Counted from the stretch's first letter, positions 6,606 to 23,384 are shown. The stretch is DNA of 64,000 nucleotides from Piromyces finnis finn (GCA_002104945.1 MCFH01000029.1:1-64000), one strand, 5' to 3'. Notes: generated by a model not told the origin, from the letters alone. Numbers and translations: made by a program.

Positions 6606-7027
6606 TGTAACGTGTATCTATATAAAAATTTACTAATATATGAATTAATAAAATTTATATAGAAAAATATTATTTATTTCCCTATAGGTTGATATAATTT
6701 GTTTAATTTTATTAGAAAATTGTTTTATTATTAATTATTTTTATTTTTAAAAATTAAAGTTACAAGTTAATAAAAACACACCATTTAATTTTTTGATTCA
6801 AACCACTTCTATTTATACTTTTTCTAAATCTGAAGTGGCTAAATAAAAAATTCAATTTTCTTTCGAAATTATTCTTTAAATTAATTAAAAATTACATAAA
6901 ATGAATCCCGTGATAAAAATACAATAAATATTTAATTTTTCGAATATTCGAACTTATTCTTTTTTCGAATAAGTTCTATAAGTTTCTATAAGTCATAAAT
7001 TAAATTGTTAAATAAATAATTTAAAAT

Positions 7028-7106
7028 AAAATTTAGATCAGGGTGTGAGTCGAACCCGAGTGATCTATATTGATGTCTTAAATACTAACCATTAAGACAA
7101 TATTAA
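7028..7106 (-). promoter_or_regulatory. Pol III type-2 promoter-like unit (A box + B box) inside LTR A
   Basis: A box TGTCTTAATGG (7099-7089, one mismatch to TRGYNNARYGG) and B box GGTTCGACTC (7056-7047). Their starts are 43 nt apart, as in the tRNA-Thr gene, and TTTT follows. No cloverleaf. Confidence 0.6.
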
Positions 7107-7121
7107 TTATCTAATAGATTC

Positions 7122-7980
7122 TGTTAAGGAATGAACATAAATAGTTGAATTAGCTAGAATTTTAGGAATTAACCTTCAACTATTTATATTCCTTACTAGT
7201 GTTTAACTCTATTTTTAAAATATAAAAATTATAATATATAATTTTTATACATTTTTCTAGTAATTATTCATATTTTTATTATATAGTTATATTATTTGTA
7301 TATAGTTATTTAAGACCTTTATTATTAGTATTAGTATAATTACTTATAATATTTTATACTTATAAATTTTACAAAATTTTATTATTAAAATAGTTATAGG
7401 AATTTTATTATTATTTAAGGTTTATTTTATTAATTAACTTTATTGTATAATATTTTATAATTTGAAATTATGACATAGAATTTAATTATAATTTTTACTA
7501 AAAGAGGCAACTGTTACACACAAAACAGAAGATACCTCGACAGAAAAATTATTATTTATGTCTAAAAAAGGGCATAATTAATTGAATAATATAATTTTAT
7601 TATATGTCATAATTAAATATATAATATATGATATGCAAAAATGTTACACATATCATAAATTAAAATTTTATTAATTATAAATTAAAAATTTTTCTATTCA
7701 AATATTAAGAGATTATTCATAATATATATTAAGGATTTAATTAATATATGTTACAGTGAATGATCCATATATTATGAATGAAATCAATTTAAATCCTTAG
7801 CTATCCAAAACCATTAAATTTCAAATAATGGATAGTTGGAAAAAGTACGAGGATTTTTGAGAAAATTTTTAAAAAATTGAAAAATCAAAAATAAATTAAA
7901 TGAATAAAAATTAAAATTAAATAAATTTTTATTTTTATAACTATTCAAGTGTTTTGTGATATCTTATTTGAACCGTAGCA
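7122..7980 (+). repeat. 5' LTR of element 2
   Basis: TGTTAAGG...CCGTAGCA; matches 13298-14156 (one substitution noticed by eye). Confidence 0.95.
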
Positions 7981-7987
7981 TAATTAA

Positions 7988-8005
7988 TGGTGGAGATATC
8001 GGGGA
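7988..8005 (+). promoter_or_regulatory. Primer binding site, tRNA-Ala type
   Basis: TGGTGGAGATATCGGGGA is complementary to a typical eukaryotic tRNA-Ala 3' end (...ATCTCCACCA). It lies 7 nt after the LTR. Confidence 0.75.
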
Positions 8006-8396
8006 TAATAATAACATATTGATATCACACTACATTTTTATAGTTACTTTTATAATTGTTTTTGTATTATTATTTAATTAAAATAGTTAATAATTCAAAA
8101 GAGGGTTATACTAGTATAATAAAAAGTTATATACTTCAAGGCACAAATTAAAATAGTTAATAGAGAGAAATTAATATTGTTAATTGGTGCAGTTAAGGAA
8201 GTATTTTATATTGGTATTACTAGTTTAACTAAAGAGAATAATTATTAGTGTTGTTAATTAAATATATTTCAAATATTGTTGTAATTCATTCTTTTAAATT
8301 CTTATAAAAGAAAATTATTTTTTTTTAAACTTGTTTCATTCTTTAATATTATTGTAAAATTGTATTTTTATCTTTATTTAAAACTTGTATATAAAA

Positions 8397-9305
8397 ATGA
8401 GTACGGGAGCTGATAAATCTATTGACTTTGCTAAATTAATGAAGGAATTAACGCATGTCACTAGATTAACCGAAGATAATTTGGACATTAAGACTTGGTA
8501 TAGTCAATTAAAGTATTGGACTATGCTTCAAGATGTTAAAAGTCCAAAAATGGTGTTTCTAGCTTGTTTGTTTACTACTACAGGAACACCAAATGAACTT
8601 ATTCAAGAGTTGAATCCTAATAAGGACTTCGAAAGTGATGAAGACAGTGAAGATAGTGATGAAGAAGATGAAGGTAGAGGAAAGAGAAGAGCTCACTACC
8701 CTTCCCTTAAAAAGATAGTCACTATGTTAGAAGAATTTTATGGAGTAAAGGAAGATCAAATAGAACTTCTCAAGGAGCTTAGGGATATGCGAATCAAAAA
8801 GAATGAAAAAGTAAAAGACTTCAACATAAGGTACCGTTCCTTGTATGTCAAACTAGACAAGAAGCGTAGAAGGAAAGTAGATGTTGAAGATTACTTAGAT
8901 TCCATTGAGCCTAACTATAAAGCCTGGGAAAATGTGCGTAGGGAAAAAGAAGTTACCTTAGCAGAAGCCTACAAGCTTGCCGAAGATGGGGACAGACTAA
9001 ATTTAAGAAATCGTCATAAAGCTAACAATTATGATGTATCCACCTCTTCTAACTCTGATAAAAGATATAAAAATAAATATGAAAGAAAAGAAGATAGCTA
9101 TGAAAGGAACAAGAAGCCAACAATAGCGAATTATGGTAATGATAAGAAAGATCCTATGAATGAGTTGACGGAGAAAATGAGAAACTTAACTATCAAAACT
9201 TGCTACTTTTGCAACGAGAAGGGACACTTTCAATATCATTGTCCTAAGCTGAGTGCCATAGTAGAAGAAAACAAACAAAAGGCCAGAAAAGGTCATTTAA
9301 ATTAG
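8397..9305 (+). CDS. gag: Gag of element 2 with C-terminal CCHC zinc knuckle
   Basis: First ATG at 8397 (the ORF track opens at TTG 8385). Contains CYFCNEKGHFQYHC and ends GHLN*. Confidence 0.92.
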   Translation: MSTGADKSIDFAKLMKELTHVTRLTEDNLDIKTWYSQLKYWTMLQDVKSPKMVFLACLFTTTGTPNELIQELNPNKDFESDEDSEDSDEEDEGRGKRRAHYPSLKKIVTMLEEFYGVKEDQIELLKELRDMRIKKNEKVKDFNIRYRSLYVKLDKKRRRKVDVEDYLDSIEPNYKAWENVRREKEVTLAEAYKLAEDGDRLNLRNRHKANNYDVSTSSNSDKRYKNKYERKEDSYERNKKPTIANYGNDKKDPMNELTEKMRNLTIKTCYFCNEKGHFQYHCPKLSAIVEENKQKARKGHLN

Positions 9306-9329
9306 ATAGTGGGAGAAGAAGCACTCCCA
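9296..9329 (+). promoter_or_regulatory. -1 ribosomal frameshift signal of element 2
   Basis: In-phase U UUA AAU (9296-9302), 7-nt spacer, UGGGAG/CUCCCA stem (9310-9315/9324-9329) with 8-nt loop. The -1 frame is open through to the 9755 ATG. Confidence 0.85.
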
Positions 9330-12300
9330 GTAATCCAAAAATAGCTTCACTTAATAACAGTTCAGTTGATAATAATGAGTACTCTGAATATTCTGAGTAT
9401 TCTGACTTATCAGATAATGAAGAAATATCTTCTATTGAAGATAAAATTATTGCTGCAGCTAAAAGAAAAGCTAATGATGAAGAAGACTCTTCCAAGAAAA
9501 GAGTACAAAAATCATTAAAAGAAGACCCAAGACCAATAGTTACCCCTGCTACTAGGAAGCAACAAGAACGTGAACTCAGTAATGAGAGTTTAGAATCAGG
9601 TTCACCATCACAACCCAAGAACCAACTTGACACGTCTGTTCTGAGTCAACCTAATATTAACAAGGAAAAAGAAAAAAGTAAAAGACTCAGAGAAAAACAA
9701 AGAAGTAAACCACCAACCCCCATAAATAAAGACGAAAGAGAAGAAAACGAAGATATGGAGGTCAGTATTGATACGGAAGATAAAGTAGAAGTAGAAAAAG
9801 CTAAAAAGAAAAATACAGATATTCTACCGACGTTATTGAAAATGACTAAAGATAAAGAAAAAGATAAAACTAAAGAGGAGAAAGTCACACGTAATATCCA
9901 AATGAGAGGTGATACCAGTGATTATGATATTTTTGAAGATTTAAACACAGCTAAATGTGATATTACTTATGGACAGTTATTTAATGTATGCCCAAAAATA
10001 AGAACACAACTTTCCCAAGGACTAAAGTTAGAGAAAGTACAAAGCAAGGTATCAGGTGCATTAAATAACATAGTAGCTACTACAACCTTATTAAATAATA
10101 TCTACCATGACTATATAAGTAAGAATAATGAAGCTTCAGAAGAGGATATAGCAATGGTGGATGCGACTGTGGATGGAATACCAGGAAAACTACTGGTGGA
10201 TACGTGTAGTAACTTAAATGTTATTACATCTTCTTTTTACAAAAGACTACCAAAGGAATATGAAGTGGTAGGAATAAGCAAAGGACGTATTCGACTAGCT
10301 ACTACTGATGAAGAATACTCTGAGGGTACTGTGGTGCGTATACCAGTTAGAATAGGAGAGGTAGAACTAGTGGTTGACTTCAGAATACTTGAAAAAGAAG
10401 AACCGTTCTATGATATGTTAATAAATTATAAAACTCAAGTAGATAATTTATTATATATAAATCCAGTAACCAAGAGCTTATGTCAAGTGAAAGAAAGAGG
10501 TGTAGTAGAAGAAATAGTACCTATCAATAACCAATATTATAATGAAGGAAAATTGGTATGTACTATTAAGAAGATACCAGATGGAGATACTAAAAGCTTG
10601 AAGTCTATTGAAGGTTTACCACCTCAGGAGTATATACACAATGAGATATTCTTGAACACCTTACCAAAAGATAAACGGAAAGAAATACTCCGACTTTTGG
10701 AAGAAAACTTAGAGATTATTGCGACGTCTTCTGAGGAATTAACGCCTTCTAAATTATCACCACATAAAATAAATCTAAAGGCTGGTGTAAAACCAGTTAA
10801 ACAAAGAGCTTATAGGTTAACTAAATTTAAATCAGATATACTAAAAGAAGAGTTAACTAAGCTAATAGAAAAAAAGTTAATAGAGCCGTCCTATTCAGAA
10901 TGGTCCTCCCCTGTAGTTCTGGTTCCAAAACATAATGGTAAGTGGAGAATGTGTGTGGACTATAGGAGAGTGAACGACCTCACGGAAAAGGACTCTTATT
11001 CACTCCCCTATATTGATGAAATATTTGATAGTCTGAACGGAGCCAAAATATTCACTACTATGGACTTATATTCAGGTTATCATCAAATTTCTATGCATGA
11101 GGAAAGCACTGAGGTTACTAGTTTTACTACCAAGTTTGGTAACTATCAGTTTAAGGTCATGCCGTTTGGGTTAACTAATGCACCAGCAACTTTTCAGAGG
11201 GAAATGAATAAGATATTATTTCCTTTAATAGGAAATTGTGTATATAATTTTATTGATGATGTACTCATATATTCCAAGAGTGTGGAAGAACACATGGAAC
11301 ATATTAAGAGAGTATTTGAAATATTGAAAGAAAATGAATTAAAAATAAATCTTGAGAAATGTAGTTTTATGAAGGAAGAAGTAAATGTATTAGGTCACAG
11401 GTTATCTACTAAAGGTTTGAGTCCTTTGGAAAGTAAAATAGAAGCCATAAGGAAGTGGGAAGCTCCAGGAAATATTCATGAGTTACGTTCGTTTTTGGGT
11501 GCAGTAGGATATTATCGAAATTTTATTCCTAATTATTCTCAAGTAACCGCGCCCTTATGTGAGTTATTAAAGAAAAATGTACGATATAAATGGGAAGAAA
11601 AACATGAAAAAGCATTTAAAGTATTAAAAGAAAAACTGATAAACGCTCCCATTTTAAAGTTTCCTGAATTTGATAAGCCTTTTATCATACGTACGGACGC
11701 GTCGTATGAAGGAGTGGGTGGTGTTTTATTACAAGAAGATGAAACTAACAAAATAGAACACCCTGTACATTATATTAGTCGAAGTCTTAGTAAAGCGGAG
11801 AAGAACTATGGAATAACAGAGTTAGAAGGTGCTGCGTTATTCTTTTGCGTGAGTAAGTTAAAACCTTATATTTTAGGAAACCCGTACACTACTATGGTTT
11901 ATACGGACCATAAACCACTTTTGGGTTTATTTAAAAATAAGGAACCAAATAGTGCACGTCACAACAGATGGTGTCTTACAGTAAGTCAGTTGGATATTGA
12001 TATTCAATATGATAAAGGAAAGAATAATGTTATAGCTGATGCATTATCAAGAATGAAGAATAAAGAGGAGAAAAAGATACTGGTAACAAAAATTAATAAA
12101 ACTAATAATGAAGAGTTATTAACCAAAGTTATTAAGGAGTTTATAGCTGAAAAATTTACTACCATAGATGGGAAAGACTATTTCGTAGATGGTAATAACT
12201 TACGTCAGCTAATATCTACTGTAGAAGAAAAAGTAAAGTTAATATTTCAAGCACATAACGTAGGTCATGAAGGTTATTATAAGACTTATCAAAGGTTAAA

Positions 12301-13273
12301 GAAAAATTATTATTGGAATGATATGATAGCGGATATTAAAAGAATTATTAGCAAGTGTGAGAAGTGTCAAGTAAATAGACCACAACCTTATCCAGAACCA
12401 ACTGAGGACAAAGCTACTAAAGTGGAAGGACCATTTGTACATCTAGGTTTGGATATTATTGGGCCATTACCTAAGACAAAAAATAGTAAACAATATATAA
12501 TAGTCATAGTTGACTATTTTACTAAATGGGTAGAAGCCGAAGCGGTGGAAACTGTTACTTCTCTGGACGTGATAAAGTTTTTAATAAATGTGTTTGCAAG
12601 ACATGGGGTACCACAAGTTATTACTACAGATAATGGAACTCAATTTACCTCAGATATGACAAAGATATTTCTAGACCTATATGACGTATATGTGAAGTTC
12701 ACAGTTCCCTACCACCCTGAAAGTAATGGATTAACAGAAAACCGAAATAAGGAAATTGGGAAACTTTTAAGACTTTTAGGGAAAGAAAGTAAAGACTGGG
12801 ATGAAGTTCTACCTTCCGCGCTTTGGGCCTTAAGAACTACAAAGAATACGGCTACGAAACATTCAAGTTTTGAGCTAGTTTATGGTAGGGAAGACCAACA
12901 ACCTTTTGATATAGCTGCCCGACCCACTAAAGATCAAAACAAGAGTTCCGATGAAATTCTTTTGGAAAAGTTTATAAATCACTACCGATGGACCCTAGAA
13001 GCTGCTGAAAATGTAAAGACGGCTAATAAATATTGGTCTATGAGAAGAGAAGAAAAATTAAGTATGAACCAAGCTAAGAAAATAAAAGTAGGTGACCTAG
13101 TTTTGGTAAGAAACTTCAGTAGAACAAAATTGGAACCTTACTTTGTAGGACCTCTCAAAGTGGTCCAGAAACAGTTCAATACAGTAGTCTTAGCAGACCC
13201 AGAAACTGGAGTACTAATGAACAGAAATGTACATTTCAAAAATGTCGTTAAATATAACTCAGCAACGGAGTAG
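9302..13273 (+). CDS. pol: Pol (PR-RT-RNaseH-IN) of element 2; frame opens at the frameshift site, first ATG 9755
   Basis: PR-like LVDTCS; RT WSSPVVLVPK, MDLYSGYHQI, FIDDVL; RNase H RTDAS and YTDHKPL; IN HHCC, GLDIIGP, TDNGTQF, GLTENRN. No chromodomain; uninterrupted. Confidence 0.97.
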   Translation, partial: LDSGRRSTPSNPKIASLNNSSVDNNEYSEYSEYSDLSDNEEISSIEDKIIAAAKRKANDEEDSSKKRVQKSLKEDPRPIVTPATRKQQERELSNESLESGSPSQPKNQLDTSVLSQPNINKEKEKSKRLREKQRSKPPTPINKDEREENEDMEVSIDTEDKVEVEKAKKKNTDILPTLLKMTKDKEKDKTKEEKVTRNIQMRGDTSDYDIFEDLNTAKCDITYGQLFNVCPKIRTQLSQGLKLEKVQSKVSGALNNIVATTTLLNNIYHDYISKNNEASEEDIAMVDATVDGIPGKLLVDTCSNLNVITSSFYKRLPKEYEVVGISKGRIRLATTDEEYSEGTVVRIPVRIGEVELVVDFRILEKEEPFYDMLINYKTQVDNLLYINPVTKSLCQVKERGVVEEIVPINNQYYNEGKLVCTIKKIPDGDTKSLKSIEGLPPQEYIHNEIFLNTLPKDKRKEILRLLEENLEIIATSSEELTPSKLSPHKINLKAGVKPVKQRAYRLTKFKSDILKEELTKLIEKKLIEPSYSEWSSPVVLVPKHNGKWRMCVDYRRVNDLTEKDSYSLPYIDEIFDSLNGAKIFTTMDLYSGYHQISMHEESTEVTSFTTKFGNYQFKVMPFGLTNAPATFQREMNKILFPLIGNCVYNFIDDVLIYSKSVEEHMEHIKRVFEILKENELKINLEKCSFMKEEVNVLGHRLSTKGLSPLESKIEAIRKWEAPGNIHELRSFLGAVGYYRNFIPNYSQVTAPLCELLKKNVRYKWEEKHEKAFKVLKEKLINAPILKFPEFDKPFIIRTDASYEGVGGVLLQEDETNKIEHPVHYISRSLSKAEKNYGITELEGAALFFCVSKLKPYILGNPYTTMVYTDHKPLLGLFKNKEPNSARHNRWCLTVSQLDIDIQYDKGKNNVIADALSRMKNKEEKKILVTKINKTNNEELLTKVIKEFIAEKFTTIDGKDYFVDGNNLRQLISTVEEKVKLIFQAHNVGHEGYYKTYQRLKKNYYWNDMIADIKRIISKCEKCQVNRPQPYPEPTEDKATKVEGPFVHLGLDIIGPLPKTKNSKQYIIVIVDYFTKWVEAEAVETVTSLDVIKFLINVFARHGVPQVITTDNGTQFTSDMTKIFLDLYDVYVKFTVPYHPESNGLTENRNKEIGKLLRLLGKESKDWDEVLPSALWALRTTKNTATKHSSFELVYGREDQQPFDIAARPTKDQNKSSDEILLEKFINHYRWTLEAAENVKTANKYWSMRREEKLSMNQAKKIKVGDLVLVRNFSRTKLEPYFVGPLKVVQKQFNTVVLADPETGVLMNRNVHFKNVVKYNSATE

Positions 13274-13297
13274 CTTGAGTTTTAACGAAGGGCATTC

Positions 13298-14156
13298 TGT
13301 TAAGGAATGAACATAAATAGTTGAATTAGCTAGAATTTTAGGAATTAACCTTCAACTATTTATATTCCTTACTAGTGTTTAACTCTATTTTTGAAATATA
13401 AAAATTATAATATATAATTTTTATACATTTTTCTAGTAATTATTCATATTTTTATTATATAGTTATATTATTTGTATATAGTTATTTAAGACCTTTATTA
13501 TTAGTATTAGTATAATTACTTATAATATTTTATACTTATAAATTTTACAAAATTTTATTATTAAAATAGTTATAGGAATTTTATTATTATTTAAGGTTTA
13601 TTTTATTAATTAACTTTATTGTATAATATTTTATAATTTGAAATTATGACATAGAATTTAATTATAATTTTTACTAAAAGAGGCAACTGTTACACACAAA
13701 ACAGAAGATACCTCGACAGAAAAATTATTATTTATGTCTAAAAAAGGGCATAATTAATTGAATAATATAATTTTATTATATGTCATAATTAAATATATAA
13801 TATATGATATGCAAAAATGTTACACATATCATAAATTAAAATTTTATTAATTATAAATTAAAAATTTTTCTATTCAAATATTAAGAGATTATTCATAATA
13901 TATATTAAGGATTTAATTAATATATGTTACAGTGAATGATCCATATATTATGAATGAAATCAATTTAAATCCTTAGCTATCCAAAACCATTAAATTTCAA
14001 ATAATGGATAGTTGGAAAAAGTACGAGGATTTTTGAGAAAATTTTTAAAAAATTGAAAAATCAAAAATAAATTAAATGAATAAAAATTAAAATTAAATAA
14101 ATTTTTATTTTTATAACTATTCAAGTGTTTTGTGATATCTTATTTGAACCGTAGCA
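13298..14156 (+). repeat. 3' LTR of element 2
   Basis: Copy of 7122-7980, preceded by the purine-rich AACGAAGGG plus CATTC. Confidence 0.95.
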
Positions 14157-14166
14157 ATTCGTTACA

Positions 14167-14221
14167 GTATTGAAATTATTTGGGTAATTATTTCTGTAAT
14201 TATTCCTTTTGTTAAAACGTT
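14167..14221 (-). pseudogene. gag: Continuation of element 1 gag
   Basis: Reads KRFNKRNNYRNNYPNNFN in frame with 6605 onward. The frame closes shortly after entering segment X. Confidence 0.75.
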
Positions 14222-15405
14222 TGTCACGAATACTAGTGAAATTACAATTTCAAGATCACTTGGAATTGTGAAATCACTTATGAAAATTTAAAATCAACAA
14301 ATATTTTATTTTCAAATAAATTATAAAATTTTATTAAGAAATATTTAAAAATTTAGGAAAGGTTAAAATATGACCTTAACCCTTAGTAATTTTTATAATA
14401 AATAACTTTAACCCTTATCGTTAAAATGGAATAAGAAAAAACACGCGTATCTCCTCAACGAATGACGATTTTTGAATAAAAATGTTTTGGTTATAATTAC
14501 GTTCGTTAGAAAGCCACGCTCGAGACAAACAACATATCTTAAAATCAGGTCAATATCTCTGCTGGTTCACGAGATATTCCAATTTAAAGATATTTTGTTA
14601 GCAATGATTAATTGTTTATTCAGAGAATGATCACCCCTGATATATCAAACATAAATCATTCACTCAAAGTATAAAAAATTATTGTTTAATTAAATTAAAA
14701 TTATTTTCCGGAACTAATTAACTTTATTTTATAATAATTATTTCAATAACATAATTTATAATCTTTGAACTAGAGGATTATAATTATTAATATTATATTC
14801 AATGAATTATATTATAATTAAGAAATAATTAATATTATGAATATTATAAACAATAGTTATTTTTTAATAATTAGGAATAAGTCTTAAGTTTAGTTTAAGT
14901 ATTATAAAATATATTATGAATATAATCATGTATTGAAAAGTTATTTTATTATTAAATGTAAAATTACAAATAGTATAAATAGTTTAGAATAGTTTATGAA
15001 ATTAAAATCTTTGTAAAGATTATTAACCAAAAATTATTAACCATAAATTATTAAATTATTAACTATAAATTATTAACTAAAGATTATTAACTATAAATTA
15101 TTAACTATTAATAATAATTAATACTTAATGAGTACTACTACTAAATAATCTTATTATTATATATTTTAGCAATATATCATTAAATAAAATAAAAGAAATT
15201 ATTTTAACCATAATATATAATTTAATTATTCATTTATAAATCAATTAAGATTATTTTAATAAAACATTTTTTTTTTTCTAACCTAGTTATCTTTTAACCT
15301 TTTATTTAATTTAATATTTTAATATTAAATTATAAGTTTAGTAAAACTTTTACATAACAGAAGAAGTAGTTAAAAAGTTATAATATAACTACCAATCCGT
15401 TATCA
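14222..15405. mobile_element. LTR-like segment X (1184 bp) with non-matching flanks
   Basis: TG...CA ends (TGTCACG / CCGTTATCA). The last ~52 bp are the reverse complement of the element-3 LTR terminus. Right flank TAAA, left flank CGTT. It may be composite. Confidence 0.55.
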
Positions 15406-15409
15406 TAAA

Positions 15410-17162
15410 TGATAACGGATTGGTAGTTATTCTACAACTTTTTAAACTACTTATTCGTTACCTTATATTGTTTTATCTCGACAGCTATTGTACGAGCTTT
15501 AACAATATCTACTTGTTTTATTATTTATTTTAATTTATTTTATAATATTTATAGTTTTATTATTTAATAATATTTATATAGAATAATAACACCAGATTTA
15601 TTCTATAAAATATTATTTATTATTAACACAATAATTACAAACTAGACAAGTTTAATTTCGTTTTTATATTTTCTTTTATTTATTGTTTTTATACTCTTTT
15701 TTAACAATAATTTTTATTATATAAAAACTTATTTTTGTCTTTTAATTATTATTATGTATTATTTAACTAACTATATTAACTATTATTAAAAATTCAACTT
15801 CTTATTAATATGTTAAGTCTTCCTATTTTCTACTAAAAATTATTATTATTCTTTATATTAAAAATTATTTTTATAATTTAACCCAATCAAATATATAAAT
15901 TTATAAAATATTTGATTTTATGTAAATTATATTTTTATGCTAAACTATATAAAATTATTTAATAATTATTTTTATAATAAAACGTTGTTAAGTTTTTGGG
16001 TTTGGTTATGCGGCCAGGTCAGAATGTTATTAATTATATAGTAAAAATGTTTTTTAAGAAATTAAATTTAATTATAAAATAACACCTTAAACTCCCAAAT
16101 GAAAATTGAAAAGTTTATATTTACTTTAAAATAACTTTTTATAAATTTTTTATTTATTTAATAATAATAATATAAATGATATTATAAGTAACTATATAAT
16201 TAAGATTATAACTATAATCTTTACAAAGAATTAAAATCGAATTCAATTCATTCTCTTTTATATTCTTTGTTCAGATTATTAAATTGATATTAATAAGAAT
16301 AAAGTATTACATGTAATATATTAGTAATATAATTAAATAAGTAATAAGATTGTTTGTTTGTTTGTTTGTTTGTCTGTTTGTCATGACATAAAATAAAATA
16401 AACATATGATTAATCATTTAAACAGTTGATCCTAATTAGTAATTATAAAAACTATTCAATTAATAATTCATCATTATTAATTGATATTACCATAACATAT
16501 TTGTTATAATTAAATAATTATTATTTTCAAAATTATTTCTAATAAAACTTGCCGTTAACCTATTTTATAATAATTAAGATTATTTAATTTATAGGTGTTA
16601 ACTGTTACACCTAAATGGGTCTAGTTCTATTTTTAGTAACAATCGTTATCATTAATTAAATTAATATAACTAAAATTCCTATTGATATATTTTTAATTTC
16701 ATCAAGTCATAAGAAATATTTATGATCCATACTTGATATCATATTGATTTTAATTTACCTAATAAAATCTTTAAATGATCATAACTTCCTTAAATGATCA
16801 GTTAGAAGGACCGCGATTGTACCAAATTGTAGCTTTCTTCCTAAGCTTTCCAATAAACCTAGTTTCATCACCGTAGCGATCGTTTTTTGGCGAGTTACAC
16901 CTTATTTCGTACTTGCTTATTTTTGGTTAAGGGTTATAGTGTATTGATATTAAATTTTTGAAATCATAACCCTTTCACTGAATCAAAATTTAAAAGGTGA
17001 CTTTTAAAAGTGTTTTAAAATAATTATTGAAATTATTTAATTATAATTATTATGTTTAATTAATTATAGATATTATCTGAATTTGTTTTAAATCCAGTTA
17101 ATATCTTCACAAACGTTCTACAAATATCAAATTTATAATATATTTATAATTATTATTTATCA
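15410..17162 (-). mobile_element. Solo LTR Y (diverged element-3 family, ~622 bp net) with nested insert
   Basis: Collinear with 17167-17791 apart from scattered differences. Flanked by TAAA at 15406-15409 and 17163-17166. Confidence 0.9.
15986..17111. mobile_element. Solo-LTR-like element Z (1126 bp) nested in Y
   Basis: Termini TGTTAAG / CTTCACA (imperfect inverted repeat). 5-bp TSD AACGT at 15981-15985 and 17112-17116. Contains a (TTGT)n tract near 16350-16381. Confidence 0.85.
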
Positions 17163-18146
17163 TAAATGATAACGGATTGGTAGTTATATTACAACTTTTT
17201 AACTACTTCTTCTGTTATCTTATATTGTTTTATCTCGACAGCTATTGTACGAGCTTTAACAATATCTACTAGTTTTATTAATTTATTTTAAGTTATTTTA
17301 TAATTTTAATAGTTTTATTATTTTAATAATATTTATATAGAATAATAACACCAGATTTATTCTATAAAATATTATTTATTATTAACACAATAATTACAAA
17401 TTAGACAAGTTTAATTTCGTTTTTATATTTTCTTTTATTTATTGTTCTTACGCTCTTTTTAACAATAATTTTTATTATATAAAAACTTATTTTTTTTTGT
17501 CTTTTAAATATTATTATGTATTCACTAATTAATTATATTAACTATTATTAAAATTTAACTTATTATTAGTAATCTAAGTCTTCTTATTTTCTACTAAAAA
17601 TTATTATTATTCTTTATATTAAAAATTATTTTTATAATTTAACCCAATCAAATATATAAATTTATAAAATATTTGATTTTATGTAAATTATATTTTTATA
17701 ATAAACTATATAAAATTATTTAATAATTATTTTATAATAAAATTTTCTACTAATATCAAATTTATAATATATTTATAATTATTATTTATCAAGATTTCCT
17801 CCCCTAAGATACGACTTAGTGGTAGCTGATAAAAATATTCATAAATAATAATAAATATATAAGTTTTTGATATTTTTATACTAAATATTTAAAAATTTAA
17901 ATTTTTTTTTTTTTTCTATATATATATATATATATATATATGATAAAAATAATATAAAATAAGGTTTATAAAAAAATGATGAAAAATTTGAAAATTTTTA
18001 TTAATAAAATTTTTTTTTTTTTCAAAGAGAAATAAAAAAAATGAAGTGAAATTTTGTTAAATGTCGTAGTGTAAATATTTTTGTGTTTTTATATATTTTT
18101 GTAATGTAATTGTCGTATTATTTGTATATAAATGTTTAATGTGGTT

Positions 18147-20138
18147 TTATCTTTCTTTAAACTTTGAAAATAGATGAAATTTTGATTTTAATATGTCGAA
18201 ATAATGTCGTTTTAAAATTGAAGTTACTGATTTGATATAATCTTTTAGATTGAAAATAATTGAATTTGAAATACTTTCTTTTACACTTTTTATTATACTG
18301 AAATATATATTCTTAAACGAATTATTTGATGAATTTTTGATTATATCATTTTGTTTATTTCGCTTTTTTCTTGATTTTAATTTCCTGTTAATATTAATAT
18401 TCAAGTGATTATATTTTAGAATTTTACTTTTATTTTTATATATCTTGATTTTGTGGCATTTTTCGTGAATAATTGGCGTTTTTTCTGCTTCATCACGGCC
18501 GACAAGATTTGACTTATTAATTGAAAATTTAATAAGTGAATCGTTTTTAATTCTTTTTGGAAATTTGCTGAAATTTGAATGAAAAATGTGATATTTTGGA
18601 TAAAAATATTTATTTTTAAATTTGAATAAATGTCGAAATTTAATTGAATATAAAAGTTTGTTTTTATTGTTAAAAGTCGAATTAAAATTTTGAATTTTGA
18701 TATTATTATTAAATGAATTAAATTGAGTTTCATTAATATTTGATGGATTGAAACAATGAATCATTGAAATATTTGAAAGATTATTTTTATTTTGTTTAAA
18801 ATTTGAGGGACGAGCAACCATAATAGGAGATGAATTAGTTTTCATGTAGAGAGAGTCATCATCAGGATCAATGTATAATCGGTGATCCTTTTGAGATTGA
18901 CGACCTAATATAATATCATAACATGAATCTTCATCTTCTAGAATCCAGAATAATGCATAGATTTTTAAATCACCAAATTTAAGAGTTAAATTAACAGCTT
19001 GATTTGTTGAAATAACTTGTTTGCTAGCTAATTTAAAGAAAGTTCTCTTAAAATGTGTAATATTATGATTTGCTGATATTAAATTAAAGAAGGATTTAGT
19101 AATAACATTAACATCAGAACCAGTATCTACTAAAACTCGGACAATGTTATTATCAATTGAGCCAATGACAGAAGCAATGTTGATTTTATTAATGACATTA
19201 ATTTCGTTATCTGCTATATTGATAATATCATCATCATTGTCATTATCAGCATCATCATTGTTTTCATTATTTTTATTATTATAATTTTCATTAATGATAT
19301 TAATAAATGAATTAATATCATCATCATTAAGATCCATATTTTGAATGGCGTTTATTTTCCGAACGTCATTTGGATCAAGCTTTAAACCTTTGGCACAAAG
19401 TCTTCTGATGATAGGACTGACTGCAAGTAATTGTGCAAAAGAGATACCAGCATTTGTATTATTAAGGGCATCAAAAATATTATATTCTTTATTTTTGCCC
19501 AACATGACAATAGAACGTAGGAAGTCATAATAGTTGCTTTTGGGAGACTTTTTGCTATCTATAACTTCTTCTAATTCGTCCTGTTTACTTGATATATCTG
19601 GACCAATTCTTCTTTTATTTCTGGTTTCTTTATTTTTCATCTTAGCAGAGGAAATATTCTTGCCTGCAATTACCGAGGGGTCTAAGATGTCTAGGCGGGA
19701 AGTAGTGGTATGAAAATTTGAATTTTTCTCATTACGAATTTCTTGCTGTTCTTTCATCTGAGTGGCCTTTGTGTGTATTGGCAAGGGGTTTTCTCGAAGT
19801 TTCTTTTTCTTCGACCGAGTCACGTGATCCTCATCTTCACTTTCATCACTTTCTTCAGAACTTTTCCTCTTGAATGCGTAAATAAGGTTTTCGATGTCCT
19901 TATCATCGATTGTATTTGTCACGTGATTTTGTGTAACACCATCCTTATCTATGTCTTTGATTGGATCATCCACCAAAGGGTCAGAGAATTTTTCTTCAGA
20001 ATTTGAAAATTTTTCTGTTTTATGTGAGTCACGTGTATCATTAACATAGATTTGCTCATTAATGTTGTTGATGTTGTGGGTTTGGTTATTATCAATTTTG
20101 GAGTTAGAAGGGGAAGATTGAGAACTTCCCCCATTTAA
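18147..20138 (-). CDS. Element 3 ORF2: aspartic protease plus basic tail (frameshift-dependent)
   Basis: VLVDTGSDVNVI protease motif and an ISFAQLLAVSP motif shared with elements 1 and 2. The -1 frame is open from the slippery site into the 18147-19976 ORF. Confidence 0.85.
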   Translation of the reverse strand, partial: LNGGSSQSSPSNSKIDNNQTHNINNINEQIYVNDTRDSHKTEKFSNSEEKFSDPLVDDPIKDIDKDGVTQNHVTNTIDDKDIENLIYAFKRKSSEESDESEDEDHVTRSKKKKLRENPLPIHTKATQMKEQQEIRNEKNSNFHTTTSRLDILDPSVIAGKNISSAKMKNKETRNKRRIGPDISSKQDELEEVIDSKKSPKSNYYDFLRSIVMLGKNKEYNIFDALNNTNAGISFAQLLAVSPIIRRLCAKGLKLDPNDVRKINAIQNMDLNDDDINSFINIINENYNNKNNENNDDADNDNDDDIINIADNEINVINKINIASVIGSIDNNIVRVLVDTGSDVNVITKSFFNLISANHNITHFKRTFFKLASKQVISTNQAVNLTLKFGDLKIYALFWILEDEDSCYDIILGRQSQKDHRLYIDPDDDSLYMKTNSSPIMVARPSNFKQNKNNLSNISMIHCFNPSNINETQFNSFNNNIKIQNFNSTFNNKNKLLYSIKFRHLFKFKNKYFYPKYHIFHSNFSKFPKRIKNDSLIKFSINKSNLVGRDEAEKTPIIHEKCHKIKIYKNKSKILKYNHLNININRKLKSRKKRNKQNDIIKNSSNNSFKNIYFSIIKSVKESISNSIIFNLKDYIKSVTSILKRHYFDILKSKFHLFSKFKER

Positions 20139-20144
20139 TTTAAA
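20110..20144 (-). promoter_or_regulatory. -1 ribosomal frameshift signal of element 3
   Basis: In-phase U UUA AAU (20144-20138), 6-nt spacer, GGGGAAG/CUUCCCC stem with 8-nt loop. Confidence 0.85.
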
Positions 20145-20989
20145 TGGTTTTGGGTTTTGAGGAGGGTAGCTATGATTTTGTTCACATCGGTCATTTCGTT
20201 TGGGCAGAAGCGGGCATCATGTCCTTTCTGGTTACAACGGTGGCAGATATGAATTTTCATCTGGGCAAAGCTTTTGGTCAAAGCATCCAGATCTGATTCT
20301 TTAGCTTCTTCTTTAGTAGTCTTTTCATTATCAGTACTACTATTATTTTCGTTATTATTATAAGAGGTTTTATCTTCAACTTCTATTTTTCTCTTATAAT
20401 AATTATTTTTGTTTTGAGTTCTTTTATTGGGTACATATTCATCATCACTTTCATAAGCAGATAGAAGCTCATCTGCTTTAATAGCAATGACCATAGCATC
20501 CTTTAAAGTTTTTGGTTGTTTGTTAATAAGAGAATTTAATATAGAAGTTCTCCTATTAAAAGCTTTTGTATAAAGAAAAACAAGTCTTTCTTCAGAAGGC
20601 TTGTCCCTTTCTTTAATTTCTTTCAAAAGGTCGTTAAAAGAACGGTTAAATTCTCTAACAGAGCTTTTGTTTACTTTTATTTTTTCTAACTTATTTAGGT
20701 TTCTATTAGAGGTTTTATCATCCTCAAATAAGTTAGATATTTTATTGATAAATTCATTATAAGATAGGGATCTATCTTCATAATAAATATCACTACAAAG
20801 ATCCTTTGAGTTACCGGTAGTAGCAAGCAAAGCAATTCTCTTCTTTTCTTTTTCAGAAAGAGCTAAGTCTTCTAAGATATCTTCAAGTTCCATTTTCCAT
20901 CTGAAGAACTTAGTATCTTTCTTGCCAAGAGGGCTTATTTCTTTAGCCATACTAGCGGCTCTTTCAAAATTGTTTTTATTTTCAGTCAT
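20135..20989 (-). CDS. gag: Gag of element 3 with CCHC knuckle
   Basis: CHRCNQKGHDARFC; ends NHLN*; lies just inside the PBS. Confidence 0.92.
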   Translation of the reverse strand: MTENKNNFERAASMAKEISPLGKKDTKFFRWKMELEDILEDLALSEKEKKRIALLATTGNSKDLCSDIYYEDRSLSYNEFINKISNLFEDDKTSNRNLNKLEKIKVNKSSVREFNRSFNDLLKEIKERDKPSEERLVFLYTKAFNRRTSILNSLINKQPKTLKDAMVIAIKADELLSAYESDDEYVPNKRTQNKNNYYKRKIEVEDKTSYNNNENNSSTDNEKTTKEEAKESDLDALTKSFAQMKIHICHRCNQKGHDARFCPNEMTDVNKIIATLLKTQNHLN

Positions 20990-21718
20990 ATTTAGTAAAT
21001 AAAAAAGATAATTATACTAAATATACTAATTAATAGGAATTATTTAAATTATCGGCTTTCCCACGGGACGACTGAGGTTCTCCACCACTTGATAACGGAT
21101 TGGTAGTTATATTACAACTTTTTAACTACTTCTTCTGTTATCTTATATTGTTTTATCTCGACAGCTATTGTACGAGCTTTAACAATATCTACTAGTTTTA
21201 TTAATTTATTTTAAGTTATTTTATAATTTTAATAGTTTTATTATTTTAATAATATTTATATAGAATAATAACACCAGATTTATTCTATAAAATATTATTT
21301 ATTATTAACACAATAATTACAAATTAGACAAGTTTAATTTCGTTTTTATATTTTCTTTTATTTATTGTTCTTACGCTCTTTTTAACAATAATTTTTATTA
21401 TATAAAAACTTATTTTTTTTTGTCTTTTAAATATTATTATGTATTCACTAATTAATTATATTAACTATTATTAAAATTTAACTTATTATTAGTAATCTAA
21501 GTCTTCTTATTTTCTACTAAAAATTATTATTATTCTTTATATTAAAAATTATTTTTATAATTTAACCCAATCAAATATATAAATTTATAAAATATTTGAT
21601 TTTATGTAAATTATATTTTTATAATAAACTATATAAAATTATTTAATAATTATTTTATAATAAAATTTTCTACTAATATCAAATTTATAATATATTTATA
21701 ATTATTATTTATCATAAA

Positions 21719-22576
21719 TGCTACGGTTCAAATAAGATATCACAAAACACTTGAATAGTTATAAAAATAAAAATTTATTTAATCTTAATTTTTATTCATT
21801 TAATTTATTTTTGATTTTTCAATTTTTAAAAATTTTCTCAAAAATCCTCGTACTTTTTCCAACTATCCATTATTTGAAATTTAATGGTTTTGGATAGCTA
21901 AGGATTTAAATTGATTTCATTCATAATATATGGATCATTCACTGTAACATATATTAATTAAATCCTTAATATATATTATGAATAATCTCTTAATATTTGA
22001 ATAGAAAAATTTTTAATTTATAATTAATAAAATTTTAATTTATGATATGTGTAACATTTTTGCATATCATATATTATATATTTAATTATGACATATAATA
22101 AAATTATATTATTCAATTAATTATGCCCTTTTTTAGACATAAATAATAATTTTTCTGTCGAGGTATCTTCTGTTTTGTGTGTAACAGTTGCCTCTTTTAG
22201 TAAAAATTATAATTAAATTCTATGTCATAATTTCAAATTATAAAATATTATACAATAAAGTTAATTAATAAAATAAACCTTAAATAATAATAAAATTCCT
22301 ATAACTATTTTAATAATAAAATTTTGTAAAATTTATAAGTATAAAATATTATAAGTAATTATACTAATACTAATAATAAAGGTCTTAAATAACTATATAC
22401 AAATAATATAACTATATAATAAAAATATGAATAATTACTAGAAAAATGTATAAAAATTATATATTATAATTTTTATATTTTAAAAATAGAGTTAAACACT
22501 AGTAAGGAATATAAATAGTTGAAGGTTAATTCCTAAAATTCTAGCTAATTCAACTATTTATGTTCATTCCTTAACA
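21719..22576 (-). mobile_element. Solo LTR of the element-2 family
   Basis: Reverse complement of 7122-7980 with few differences. TSD TAAA at 21715-21718 and 22577-22580. Confidence 0.96.
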
Positions 22577-22590
22577 TAAAAGATATCATT

Positions 22591-22662
22591 GCCCGTTTGG
22601 CTCAGTGGTAGAGCGTCGCTCTCGTAAAGCGAAGATCAGTGGTTCGATCCCGCTAATGGGCA
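22591..22662 (+). tRNA. tRNA-Thr (anticodon CGT), intronless
   Basis: Acceptor GCCCGTT/AATGGGC, D arm GCTC/GAGC, anticodon arm TCGCT-CTCGTAA-AGCGA, T arm AGTGG-TTCGATC-CCGCT. A T5 terminator follows within ~10 nt. Confidence 0.97.
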
Positions 22663-22725
22663 AATTCATTTTTAAAAGTTATTTTTTGTAATTTTTTATT
22701 ATAATAAAAAGATTTTATACTTTGA

Positions 22726-23384
22726 TTTTTTTTTTTTTTTAGACTAGGAAGAAAATATACTTTTTCATGTATTTATATTTATTTAATTTGTAATTTTATA
22801 TTATTTTAGGTGATAATATATTAACGTAATAATTAATAAATAAAAATAATAAAATACATAAAAATATAATTATAAAGTTAAATAAAATAATTAAGTTGCA
22901 TAAAAGTCCAATGAACTCTGCAACTTGTACTGTATAGGATTGGTTCCTACCTAATATATTAAATGAAATAATAAAGAGAAGTAATATCAGGTATGATAGT
23001 GTGGTGTCCACAAAATTTTTCCATGAGTTCATACTGTTTTTATTCGAAGAAATACTAACACTGAACCCTGTGTACGGAACATTACAAATGTTTCTTTGCC
23101 ATATCGGTACGACGTAGGCGCTCTTGATTACGTTAAGTATATTACTAAATCTATCAAAAAGTAGTCTCATTGAACTACTAATGATAGGAATTGTTTTAGT
23201 AAGAAAAGTCACGAGACCCTCTACATATGGAACATGAGACCCCGATAAATTGTAAAGCTGCTCATTCAAATATCTTTATTCCGCCTTGTCGATTTGTAGC
23301 TCATCCTAAGCTATAGTTCCACCAAGAAGGAACGTAAAAATGTAGATATAAATAATTTTTTTTCTTCCATTTCGGGGAGTAAGT
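22726..23384 (-). mobile_element. 5'-truncated LINE family B copy (3' end)
   Basis: T15 tail followed by AGACTAGGAAG as at 42578. ORF 22796-23269 matches the C-terminus of the 42632-44527 ORF. Confidence 0.9.

What the first reader, a model, noticed from the sequence alone, without database searches (positions are those of the whole stretch)
15401..22662. Polarised stack of LTR insertions at one 4-bp target 10 bp upstream of tRNA-Thr(CGT)
Seen: X-TAAA(15406)-solo LTR Y-TAAA(17163)-element 3-TAAA(21715)-solo LTR of family 2-TAAA(22577)-10 bp-tRNA. At least two unrelated LTR families therefore used the identical tetranucleotide. Age appears to increase away from the tRNA: the proximal LTR is nearly identical to the intact element 2, element 3 has matching LTRs, Y is diverged and carries a nested insert, and X has lost its left TSD. 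Known: yeast Ty3 integrates at Pol III start sites via TFIIIB, and Dictyostelium DGLT-A targets tRNA 5' flanks. Inferred: a Pol III-guided, nucleotide-precise, multi-family integration system that adds each new element at the tRNA-proximal end, leaving a chronological array. I do not know of such a system in anaerobic fungi.
Basis: partly seen in the sequence, partly recalled or inferred. Interest (0 to 1): 0.92.

Follow-up and report, generated by a model that had tools for sequence, protein, structure and literature searches.

The report
LTR retrotransposon stack anchored on tRNA-Thr
In this very AT-rich genome, probably an anaerobic gut fungus, Ty3/gypsy-type retrotransposons insert again and again at one fixed spot about 10 bases upstream of tRNA genes, as yeast Ty3 does, leaving layered stacks of old insertions.

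Summary

Corrections:
- X, Y and element 3 are all one family (family 3, two subfamilies). The stack holds two families, not more.
- X is a 51-nt stub in the opposite orientation.
- Y's 93% identity to element 3 is a subfamily difference, not age.

Genome-wide, targeting is by position, not by TAAA.
- 11 of 19 family-2 insertions sampled lie 14-16 nt from tRNA genes of nine isotypes.
- The 4-bp duplications vary in sequence.
- The element's 5' end always faces the tRNA. A terminus-plus-A-box pattern gives 13 hits in that orientation, 0 in the other and 0 in controls.
- Family 3 (gag-protease only) uses both orientations.
- Older LTRs abut each new insertion on the far side.

A second group of LTRs, with 5-bp duplications, inserts exactly 50-51 nt further upstream. 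It marks X and Y as formerly proximal.

The best reading is Ty3-like integration guided by the Pol III transcription complex. The factor involved is inferred, not shown.

Earlier notes of this scan (s1-183468, s1-185370) report the same two-site stacks elsewhere in this genome. No read-based check of the assembly was possible.

The parts
22591..22662 (+). tRNA-Thr(CGT) gene, the anchor of the stack
   Evidence: Rfam RF00005 at 67.1 bits. ARAGORN gives 22590-22663 with anticodon CGT. A T5 run follows at about 22670.
22581..22590 (+). 10-nt spacer between the proximal duplication and tRNA position +1
   Evidence: Read directly. At other tRNA genes the spacer is 8-14 nt, with a mode of 10-11.
22577..22580 (.). 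TAAA copy 4, the proximal target-site duplication (site A)
   Evidence: Read directly.
21719..22576 (-). Solo LTR of family 2, with its position 1 facing the tRNA
   Evidence: 99.8% identical over 859 nt to the LTR of element 2, reverse-complemented.
21715..21718 (.). TAAA copy 3
   Evidence: Read directly.
17167..21714 (-). Element 3, a 4.5-kb non-autonomous Ty3/gypsy-type element. 5' LTR 21090-21714, 3' LTR 17167-17791, gag 20135-20989, protease-only ORF 18147-19976.
   Evidence: The two LTRs are identical, 625/625. Pfam finds Ty3_capsid at 5.8e-11 and an aspartyl protease, with no RT or IN. A TGG-starting primer site lies inside 21089 and a purine tract beside 17792. At least 7 other copies have the same 3.9-kb LTR spacing at 99% identity.
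17163..17166 (.). TAAA copy 2
   Evidence: Read directly.
15410..17162 (-). Y, a solo LTR of family 3 (subfamily b), split by a nested LTR
   Evidence: LTR3 positions 625-50 map to 15410-15982 and positions 47-1 map to 17116-17162. It is 99.4% identical to the distal LTR3 in L002 and about 94% to the element-3 subfamily.
15986..17111 (.). 'Ynest', a 1.13-kb TG...CA LTR of the second targeting class (site B). Its 5-bp duplication AACGT is at 15981-15985 and 17112-17116. It lies 51 nt from Y's tRNA-facing end.
   Evidence: Junctions were read directly. There are 366 genomic candidates. Pairs 6.39 kb apart indicate full-length elements. Stacks with 5-bp gaps occur. The same 50-51-nt offset is seen in L003, L018, L020 and L029.
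15406..15409 (.). TAAA copy 1
   Evidence: Read directly.
15355..15405 (+). X, a 51-nt stub holding the last 51 nt of a family-3 LTR. Its orientation is opposite to Y and element 3, so its 3' end faces the tRNA.
   Evidence: LTR3 positions 574-625 match at 98%. Family 3 with its 3' end facing a tRNA is common genome-wide (L037, L048; 7 pattern hits).
14222..15354 (+). 'V', a 1.13-kb TG...CA LTR of the second class that cuts X on its left. Its flanks (ACGTT on the left, TAACA on the right) do not match.
   Evidence: There are 337 genomic candidates, and stacks with 5-bp gaps. In L012 the duplication is CACGA.
7122..14156 (+). Element 2, the intact autonomous family-2 Ty3/gypsy element. LTRs 7122-7980 and 13298-14156, gag-like ORF 8385-9305, pol 9755-13273, duplication ATTC at 7118-7121 and 14157-14160.
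   Evidence: Pfam gives PR, RVT_1, RNase H, Integrase_H2C2 and rve in that order. The LTRs are 99.9% identical. The primer site after the 5' LTR matches the 3' end of tRNA-Ala(TGC) seen in L008.
7031..7106 (-). tRNA-like module inside the 5' LTR of element 1 (LTR1 = 6606-7121 plus 14161-14166). A-box-like at 7099-7089, B-box-like at 7056-7046. Element 2 is inserted 11 nt plus the duplication upstream of it.
   Evidence: Read directly. ARAGORN and Rfam do not call it. Homologous LTR1 copies in L001 and L018 carry family-2 insertions at the same site.

Best explanation
The stack records repeated, position-specific integration by Ty3/gypsy-type LTR retrotransposons, guided by the Pol III transcription complex on the tRNA gene.

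How it would work:
- The integrase complex is docked at a fixed distance upstream of the tRNA gene, most likely on TFIIIB near the Pol III start site, as for yeast Ty3.
- It makes a 4-bp staggered cut whose proximal edge is about 10-11 nt from tRNA position +1.
- The proximal copy of the duplication stays at that distance. The next element therefore cuts the same four bases and pushes all earlier insertions outward.
- The result is X > Y > element 3 > solo family-2 LTR, all separated by TAAA.

Family differences:
- Family 2 is autonomous (PR-RT-RH-IN) and integrates in one orientation only, with its 5' end towards the tRNA (divergent transcription).
- Family 3 encodes only gag and protease, so it must borrow RT and IN in trans. 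It integrates in both orientations.
- A second group of gypsy-type elements with 5-bp duplications (LTRs V and Ynest) uses a second fixed site 50-51 nt further upstream.

Shown: the positions, orientations, duplications, stacking and family identities.
Inferred: the tethering factor, and the relative order of element 3 and the solo family-2 LTR.
For: **Local anatomy**
- Four TAAA copies sit at exact LTR boundaries, with a 10-nt spacer to the tRNA.

**Family 2 genome-wide**
- The 5' flank is visible for 19 insertions. In 11 of them, LTR position 1 lies 14-16 nt from tRNA +1 (13-16 nt from the ARAGORN start). The tRNAs are Ser x2, Arg, Glu, Cys x2, Ala, Val, Trp, Gly and Thr.
- Four more abut tRNA-like sequences with A and B boxes at tRNA spacing.
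- The pattern 'LTR2 5' terminus + 19-25 nt + A box' gives 13 hits with 0 in the control, five of them at new loci.
- The same pattern with the LTR2 3' terminus gives 0 hits.

**Family 3**
- The 5' end faces a tRNA at 13-18 nt in L027, L030, L031 and L038.
- The 3' end faces a tRNA in L037 and L048, plus 7 pattern hits.

**Target is a position, not a sequence**
- The duplications differ between genes.

**Stacking**
- The distal flank, right after the duplication, is the terminus of another LTR in most loci.
- L020 has ATTC three times.
- Two tRNAs not used to select loci (L009 tRNA-Met, L019 tRNA-Arg) also carry an LTR end at 16 and 12 nt.

**Order of insertion**
- X and Y each carry a second-class LTR exactly 51 nt from their tRNA-facing end.
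- The same 50-51-nt offset is seen in the window's left-hand stub (14171-14221) and in L003, L012, L015, L020, L029, L039 and L041. In L018 the same offset lies in non-LTR DNA beside the LTR1 tRNA-like module.

**Relation to Ty3**
- The family-2 integrase region is homologous to Ty3 integrase, 7Q5B, E = 3e-19.
- Ty3, Tj1, Tca8 and Tyl elements and DGLT-A are documented precedents (PMC5911963, PMC4600332).
Against: - No factor binding was tested, and the Pol III start site is not mapped in this organism.
- The family-2 pol ends about 10 residues after the SH3-like C-terminal domain. It has no chromodomain. The chromodomain is the part of Ty3 integrase that staples it to Brf1 (bioRxiv 10.1101/2021.07.27.453949). 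Any contact must therefore differ in detail.
- The duplication is 4 bp, not Ty3's 5 bp.
- About 80 exact family-2 5' termini exist genome-wide. Only 13 are tRNA-adjacent by a strict pattern that catches about two thirds of known cases. Many copies are therefore no longer proximal, or sit at other targets.
- L002 and L035 have mismatched flanks.
- The V|X junction has mismatched flanks and is unexplained.
- The assembly could not be checked with reads.
Confidence: 0.85

Rival explanations
1. The anchor is the Pol III gene but the tether is not TFIIIB. The integrase might instead read TFIIIC, a Pol III subunit (as Ty1 integrase reads AC40), or a positioned nucleosome edge.
For: - The family-2 integrase lacks the chromodomain that Ty3 uses on Brf1.
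- The strict one-way orientation resembles Ty3 when the TFIIIC contact is altered, and resembles Tj1 (PMC5911963, PMC4600332).
- A second site exactly 50-51 nt upstream suggests a larger fixed assembly.
Against: - The insertion window lies where TFIIIB-guided elements (Ty3, Tj1) insert.
- Ty1-type targeting through Pol III and nucleosomes gives a broad periodic window, not one site (PMC5911963).
Confidence: 0.2
2. New elements home to the termini of resident LTRs (nested or self-targeting), and the tRNA is incidental.
For: Almost every insertion abuts an older LTR terminus on one side.
Against: - The constant partner is the tRNA, at 8-14 nt on the other side.
- The older LTRs belong to at least 6 unrelated families.
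- Insertions occur inside LTR1 at tRNA-like spacing, and next to non-LTR DNA (L004, L033).
- The second-class site keeps its 50-51-nt offset in non-LTR DNA in L018.
Confidence: 0.04
3. The integrase prefers TAAA or AT-rich sequence, and the tRNA proximity arises by chance or by selection on random insertions.
For: - The genome is about 80% A+T.
- All four local duplications are TAAA.
Against: - Duplications at other genes include ATTC, GTGT, CATT and ACGT.
- The reversed-pattern control gives 0 hits against 13.
- Selection cannot produce a 3-nt-wide distance peak together with a fixed orientation.
Confidence: 0.02
4. The stack is an assembly artefact or a product of recombination between repeats.
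For: - Highly similar repeats (99-100%) are hard to assemble.
- The read check failed.
- The V|X junction has mismatched flanks.
Against: - The same architecture, with different tRNAs, duplications and element combinations, recurs on more than 30 contigs.
- Exact 4-bp separators would not arise from misassembly.
- Contigs from the source sample's runs hold 50-60% of the sampled words of 21500-22900.
Confidence: 0.02

Closest known systems
Ty3 of Saccharomyces cerevisiae (Metaviridae), with the related Ty3p, Yarrowia Tyl3/Ylt1/Tyl6 and Candida Tca8/beta
   Same: - Ty3/gypsy gene order.
- Insertion in a window a few nucleotides wide just upstream of tRNA genes.
- The target is defined by position, not sequence.
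- The family-2 integrase is homologous to Ty3 integrase (PMC5911963).
   Different: - The duplication is 4 bp, not 5 bp.
- Family 2 uses one orientation only, whereas Ty3 uses both.
- The family-2 integrase has no C-terminal chromodomain.
- The host is a different fungal phylum.
- Many families share the site, and stacks are several layers deep.
Tj1 of Schizosaccharomyces japonicus
   Same: - A Ty3/gypsy element.
- Inserts 5-11 bp upstream of the mature tRNA 5' end.
- Fixed orientation, described as unique among wild-type LTR elements (PMC4600332).
   Different: [quoted passage not shown] Family 2 here is divergent: 13 versus 0 by pattern, and 15 of 15 in the sampled loci (11 tRNA genes and 4 tRNA-like sequences).
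- Tj1 makes a 5-bp duplication.
Dictyostelium DGLT-A (LTR) and TRE5-A (non-LTR)
   Same: - Several unrelated retroelement groups target discrete distances upstream of tRNA genes: DGLT-A at 13-33 bp and TRE5 at 40-54 bp.
- Clusters build up at tRNA genes (PMC5911963, PMC5006619).
   Different: - Here both distance classes are LTR elements.
- The windows are much sharper: about +/-3 nt at the first site, and a fixed 50-51-nt offset for the second.
- DGLT-A inserts in either orientation.
Ty1/Ty2/Ty4 (copia) of S. cerevisiae
   Same: They target the region upstream of Pol III genes, so several families coexist at tRNA genes.
   Different: - They use a broad, nucleosome-periodic window of up to 1 kb, through integrase binding to AC40.
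- The second class here looked copia-like because of its 5-bp duplication. However, the ORF upstream of a V 3' LTR ends in a Tf2-type integrase SH3 domain with a chromodomain-like tail.
Helenus TRIMs (LTRs carrying a tRNA-derived sequence; PMC10886601)
   Same: LTR1 of element 1 carries a tRNA-like module with A- and B-box-like motifs at tRNA spacing.
   Different: - Helenus elements are short and non-autonomous, and are reported in Pucciniales and Agaricomycetes.
- LTR1 flanks a 1556-aa gag-pol ORF.
- Here the module acts as a target for other elements.

Membership tests
Ty3/gypsy (Metaviridae) LTR retrotransposons | pol domain order PR-RT-RNase H-IN between LTRs with TG...CA ends | tested here: met
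   In the element 2 pol ORF, protease is at residues 135-213, RVT_1 at 390-550, RNase H at 613-744, Integrase_H2C2 at 825-876 and rve at 895-988. The LTRs run TGTTAAGG...CCGTAGCA.
Ty3/gypsy (Metaviridae) LTR retrotransposons | Element 3 belongs to the same superfamily | tested here: met
   Its gag matches Ty3_capsid at 5.8e-11. Its protease region is 29% identical to that of element 2, E = 3e-24. It has no RT or IN, so it is non-autonomous.
Elements targeted to the Pol III start site (Ty3-like) | Insertions concentrated in a window a few nucleotides wide immediately upstream of tRNA genes of many isotypes | tested here: met
   11 of 19 family-2 insertions and 6 family-3 insertions lie 13-18 nt from tRNA +1. 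Pattern searches give 13 and 7 hits with 0 in controls.
Elements targeted to the Pol III start site (Ty3-like) | Target chosen by position, not by sequence | tested here: met
   The duplications vary between genes, while the spacer to tRNA +1 stays at 8-14 nt.
Elements targeted to the Pol III start site (Ty3-like) | Other Pol III genes (5S rRNA, U6) are also targeted | not tested
Only tRNA-like modules in LTR1 were seen as extra targets.
Elements targeted to the Pol III start site (Ty3-like) | Integrase binds TFIIIB (Brf1/TBP) | not testable with these tools
   The host's Brf1 and TBP sequences could not be fetched. The claim rests on analogy with Ty3 (bioRxiv 10.1101/2021.07.27.453949).
Ty3 proper | C-terminal vestigial chromodomain after the integrase CTD, which contacts Brf1 | tested here: not met
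   The family-2 pol stops about 10 residues after the SH3-like CTD. Pfam finds no chromodomain even at E <= 10.
Ty3 proper | 5-bp duplication and both orientations | tested here: not met
   Family 2 makes a 4-bp duplication and uses a single orientation, 13 versus 0.

The most novel reading that the evidence does not exclude
Anaerobic fungi may carry a two-register system anchored on Pol III genes.
- One group of Ty3/gypsy families makes 4-bp duplications about 11-14 nt upstream of tRNA +1.
- A second gypsy group makes 5-bp duplications exactly 50-51 nt further upstream.
- Each group shows fixed or family-specific orientation.
- A gag-protease-only parasite rides on the first system.
- LTRs that carry tRNA-like decoys recruit both registers.

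The family-2 integrase would achieve Ty3-like precision without the chromodomain that Ty3 uses. That implies an independently evolved contact with the Pol III machinery.
Probability: 0.55. Interest if true: 0.75.

Novelty: new variant of a known kind. Interest (0 to 1): 0.62.

Why it matters
- Targeting of Ty3/gypsy elements to Pol III genes is documented in ascomycete yeasts and in Dictyostelium. Finding it in an early-diverging fungal phylum extends the phenomenon. The held literature has no report of it there.
- The family-2 integrase lacks Ty3's Brf1-binding chromodomain. The element is also strictly oriented, opposite to Tj1. This offers a natural comparison for how integrases read the Pol III pre-initiation complex.
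- The two exact registers, 50-51 nt apart, could serve as in vivo footprints of that complex in an organism with few genetic tools.
- The stacks give relative chronologies of transposon activity.
- Safe-haven integrases of this kind could also be of interest as site-specific integration tools for anaerobic fungi.

Tried and rejected
1. **Read check of the assembly and of strain alleles.** Local scripts read window.fa only as a whole file or as a BLAST subject.
2. **More genomic loci.** A survey centred on tRNAs was therefore impossible.
3. **Cross-species test.** Family-2 pol relatives (73-78% identity) exist in rumen and gut metagenomes and in an Orpinomyces gene set. The contigs fetched (L051-L055) break at the LTRs and hold no tRNA, so they are uninformative.
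4. **Is the tRNA-like module next to element 2 a real tRNA?** ARAGORN and Rfam do not call it, even at E <= 10.
5. **Y's 93% identity as a sign of age.** Rejected. Y is 99.4% identical to another distal copy, so this is a subfamily difference.
6. **Second-class LTRs (V, Ynest) as Ty1/copia.** Suggested by the 5-bp duplication and by two coordinate coincidences with RVT_2 hits. Rejected for V: the ORF upstream of a V 3' LTR ends in a Tf2-type integrase SH3 domain. That link rests on adjacency only.
7. **Ty3-style chromodomain in the family-2 integrase.** Not present.
8. **The V|X junction.** The flanks are mismatched (ACGTT and TAACA), and V's orientation fits a target to the left. I considered recombination between two V copies from two converging stacks and could not test it.

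Full report
**1. What is in the window**

The window is extremely AT-rich, with 11-35% G+C per kb. It holds one tRNA gene, tRNA-Thr(CGT) at 22591-22662 on the + strand (Rfam 67 bits; ARAGORN).

Direct reading and BLAST against the LTRs defined here give the following order on the + strand.

| Feature | Coordinates |
|---|---|
| X | 15355-15405 |
| TAAA | 15406-15409 |
| Y | 15410-17162 |
| TAAA | 17163-17166 |
| Element 3 | 17167-21714 |
| TAAA | 21715-21718 |
| Solo family-2 LTR | 21719-22576 |
| TAAA | 22577-22580 |
| Spacer (10 nt) | 22581-22590 |
| tRNA-Thr(CGT) | 22591-22662 |

**2. What the elements are**

- *Family 2.* Its intact copy is element 2 (7122-14156, + strand). The LTRs are 859 nt and 99.9% identical. 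The duplication is ATTC. Pol carries PR-RT-RNase H-IN, so it is an autonomous Ty3/gypsy element. The solo LTR next to the tRNA is its reverse complement at 99.8%.
- *Element 3.* It lies on the minus strand. Its 625-nt LTRs are identical. It encodes a Ty3-type capsid and a protease-only ORF, with no RT or IN. At least seven other copies have the same 3.9-kb LTR spacing at 99% identity, so it is a recently mobile non-autonomous element. This agrees with scan note s1-176991. Its protease is 29% identical to that of element 2. It is a separate family of the same superfamily.
- *X and Y.* Both are family 3, not further families. Y is a solo LTR of a subfamily. It is about 94% identical to the element-3 type but 99.4% identical to the distal LTR3 in locus L002. 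X is only the last 51 nt of a family-3 LTR, in the opposite orientation.

**3. Genome-wide test**

The window is contig C155 of a 56.5-Mb, 232-contig assembly. From memory, these figures fit Piromyces finnis. Pol relatives in rumen metagenomes and in an Orpinomyces gene set support an anaerobic fungus.

The first look listed 239 candidates for the family-2 LTR and 321 for the family-3 LTR; the 40 scored copies of each are mostly 99-100% identical. I fetched 20 family-2 loci and 30 family-3 loci.

*Family 2*
- The 5' flank is visible for 19 insertions.
- In 11 of them, LTR position 1 lies 14-16 nt from tRNA +1 (13-16 nt from the ARAGORN start). The tRNAs are Ser x2, Arg, Glu, Cys x2, Ala, Val, Trp, Gly and Thr.
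- The element's 5' end always faces the tRNA 5' end.
- No 3' end abuts a tRNA.
- A genome-wide pattern (LTR2 5' terminus, 19-25 nt, A-box consensus) gives 13 hits, with 0 for the reversed control. Five of the hits are at loci I had not fetched.
- The same pattern with the LTR2 3' terminus gives 0 hits.
- There are 80 exact 5' termini in all. About 14 of them are internal to full-length elements.

*Family 3*
- The 5' end faces the tRNA in L027, L030, L031 and L038.
- The 3' end faces the tRNA in L037 and L048, with seven more 3'-facing hits by pattern.
- X's inverted orientation is therefore normal for its family.

*Duplications*
- They are 4 bp and differ from gene to gene.
- The spacer to tRNA +1 is 8-14 nt, mostly 10-11.
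- The site is specified by distance, not by TAAA.

**4. Stacking and order**

In most loci the DNA just beyond the distal duplication is the first base of another LTR. At least six families are involved. L020 repeats ATTC three times. Two tRNAs that merely happened to lie in fetched flanks (L009 tRNA-Met, L019 tRNA-Arg) also have an LTR end at 16 and 12 nt.

Reuse is not always exact. Shifts of 1-4 nt occur (L016, L018, L019, L022).

*An independent marker of order.* Two 1.13-kb TG...CA LTRs behave as a second targeting class:
- Ynest, 15986-17111, with duplication AACGT.
- V, 14222-15354.

These LTRs sit 50-51 nt inside the tRNA-facing end of an older LTR in Y, X, the left-hand stub (14171-14221), L003, L012, L015, L020, L029, L039 and L041. 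In L018, Ynest lies at the same offset in non-LTR DNA beside the LTR1 tRNA-like module.

Genome-wide they form their own stacks, separated by exactly 5 bp. One example is three V copies plus one Ynest at C13:1063166-1067641. Pairs lie 6.4-6.7 kb apart, which indicates full-length elements.

X and Y therefore each stood next to the tRNA when they received this mark. The 5' LTR of element 3 and the solo family-2 LTR carry no such mark. This supports the order X, Y, then element 3 and the solo LTR. The last step, solo LTR after element 3, follows only from the model.

Scan notes s1-183468 and s1-185370 describe the same two sites at other tRNA genes of this genome. I had reached this reading before seeing them. 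They are not independent evidence.

**5. The left part of the window**

Element 2 is not next to a real tRNA. It is nested in the 5' LTR of a third gypsy element:
- Element 1 lies on the minus strand, with a 1556-aa gag-pol ORF at 1552-6222.
- Its 5' LTR (LTR1) is 6606-7121 plus 14161-14166.
- Element 2 sits 11 nt upstream of a tRNA-like module in LTR1, with A- and B-box-like motifs at tRNA spacing.
- ARAGORN and Rfam do not call the module.
- Homologous LTR1 copies in L001 and L018 carry family-2 insertions at the same site. In L018 a second-class LTR lies 66 nt upstream of the module.

This agrees with scan note s1-176554 and extends it.

V's left flank is a 51-nt LTR stub preceded by GTAT. 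This fits a second stack growing from the left. V's two flanks do not match, so the V|X junction is a rearrangement that I cannot resolve.

**6. Mechanism**

The closest documented systems are:
- Ty3, 1-4 bp from the Pol III start site, through integrase binding to TFIIIB.
- Tj1, 5-11 bp from the mature tRNA end, with fixed orientation.
- Tca8 and the Tyl elements.
- DGLT-A and TRE5 of Dictyostelium (PMC5911963, PMC4600332, PMC5006619).

The family-2 integrase is homologous to Ty3 integrase. The CCD-CTD gap is about 120 residues by coordinates. However, pol stops just after the SH3-like CTD, so the chromodomain that Ty3 uses to grip Brf1 is absent (bioRxiv 10.1101/2021.07.27.453949).

By contrast, the ORF upstream of a V 3' LTR ends in a Tf2-type SH3 domain and a chromodomain-like tail. 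That link rests on adjacency only.

I therefore file the system as working like Ty3, not as Ty3 itself. The tether to the Pol III complex is inferred.

**7. Limits**

- No read-level check was possible.
- No tRNA-centred census could be made.
- No cross-species flanks were obtained.
- Other Pol III genes were not examined.
- The held literature has no report of tRNA-targeted elements in anaerobic fungi. This shows only that none is in that library.

**8. Verdict**

This is a new variant of a known kind: targeting of Ty3/gypsy elements to Pol III genes, in a new phylum. It has a strictly divergent orientation in one family, a parasitic gag-protease element, a second exact register 50-51 nt upstream, and an integrase without Ty3's chromodomain.

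Noticed in passing
window 15986-17111 and 14222-15354; also L003, L012, L015, L018, L020, L029, L039, L041: A second class of about 1.13-kb LTRs (5-bp duplications) inserts exactly 50-51 nt upstream of the first site. That is about 65 nt from tRNA +1. It has a fixed orientation and forms its own stacks with 5-bp separators genome-wide.
   Followed up: partly
window 7031-7106 (minus strand), inside LTR1 = 6606-7121 plus 14161-14166: The 5' LTR of a third gypsy element (ORF 1552-6222, minus strand) carries a tRNA-like module with A- and B-box-like motifs. Neither ARAGORN nor Rfam calls it. Element 2 and insertions in the homologous copies L001 and L018 sit at tRNA-like spacing from it, so it seems to act as a Pol III-type target.
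   Followed up: partly
window 15354/15355: The junction between V and the X stub has mismatched flanks (ACGTT on the left of V, TAACA on the right). V's orientation fits a target to the left. Two stacks may have met here and recombined. This is unexplained.
   Followed up: partly
L003 8531-8695; L020 2334-2485: There are closely paired tRNA genes on one strand: Ser(GCT)-Met(CAT) 8 nt apart, and Gly(TCC)-Thr(TGT) 7 nt apart. They may be dimeric tRNA transcription units like the Ser-Met genes of fission yeast. LTRs sit upstream of the first member only.
   Followed up: no
window 7981-8010 and L008 9467-9540: The primer-binding site of element 2 (starting TGGTGGAGATATCGGGGAT) is complementary to the 3' end, plus CCA, of the tRNA-Ala(TGC) gene seen in L008. 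Element 3 has a different TGG-starting site beside 21089.
   Followed up: no
L007 (C229:77680-90052): Three family-2 LTRs lie 6175 nt apart with internal sequence between them. This is a tandem pair of elements sharing the middle LTR, next to tRNA-Cys.
   Followed up: no
window 22835-23341 versus 42689-43201: About 170 nt downstream of the tRNA there begins a segment 83-91% similar to the 5' part of the LINE-like repeats at 36-54 kb.
   Followed up: no
C219:37695-42222 and C219:64636-76845 (L021-L024): The same element-3 insertion, with identical flanks, appears twice in inverted orientation on one contig. A segmental inverted duplication has carried a stack with it, so some copies are not independent insertions.
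   Followed up: no
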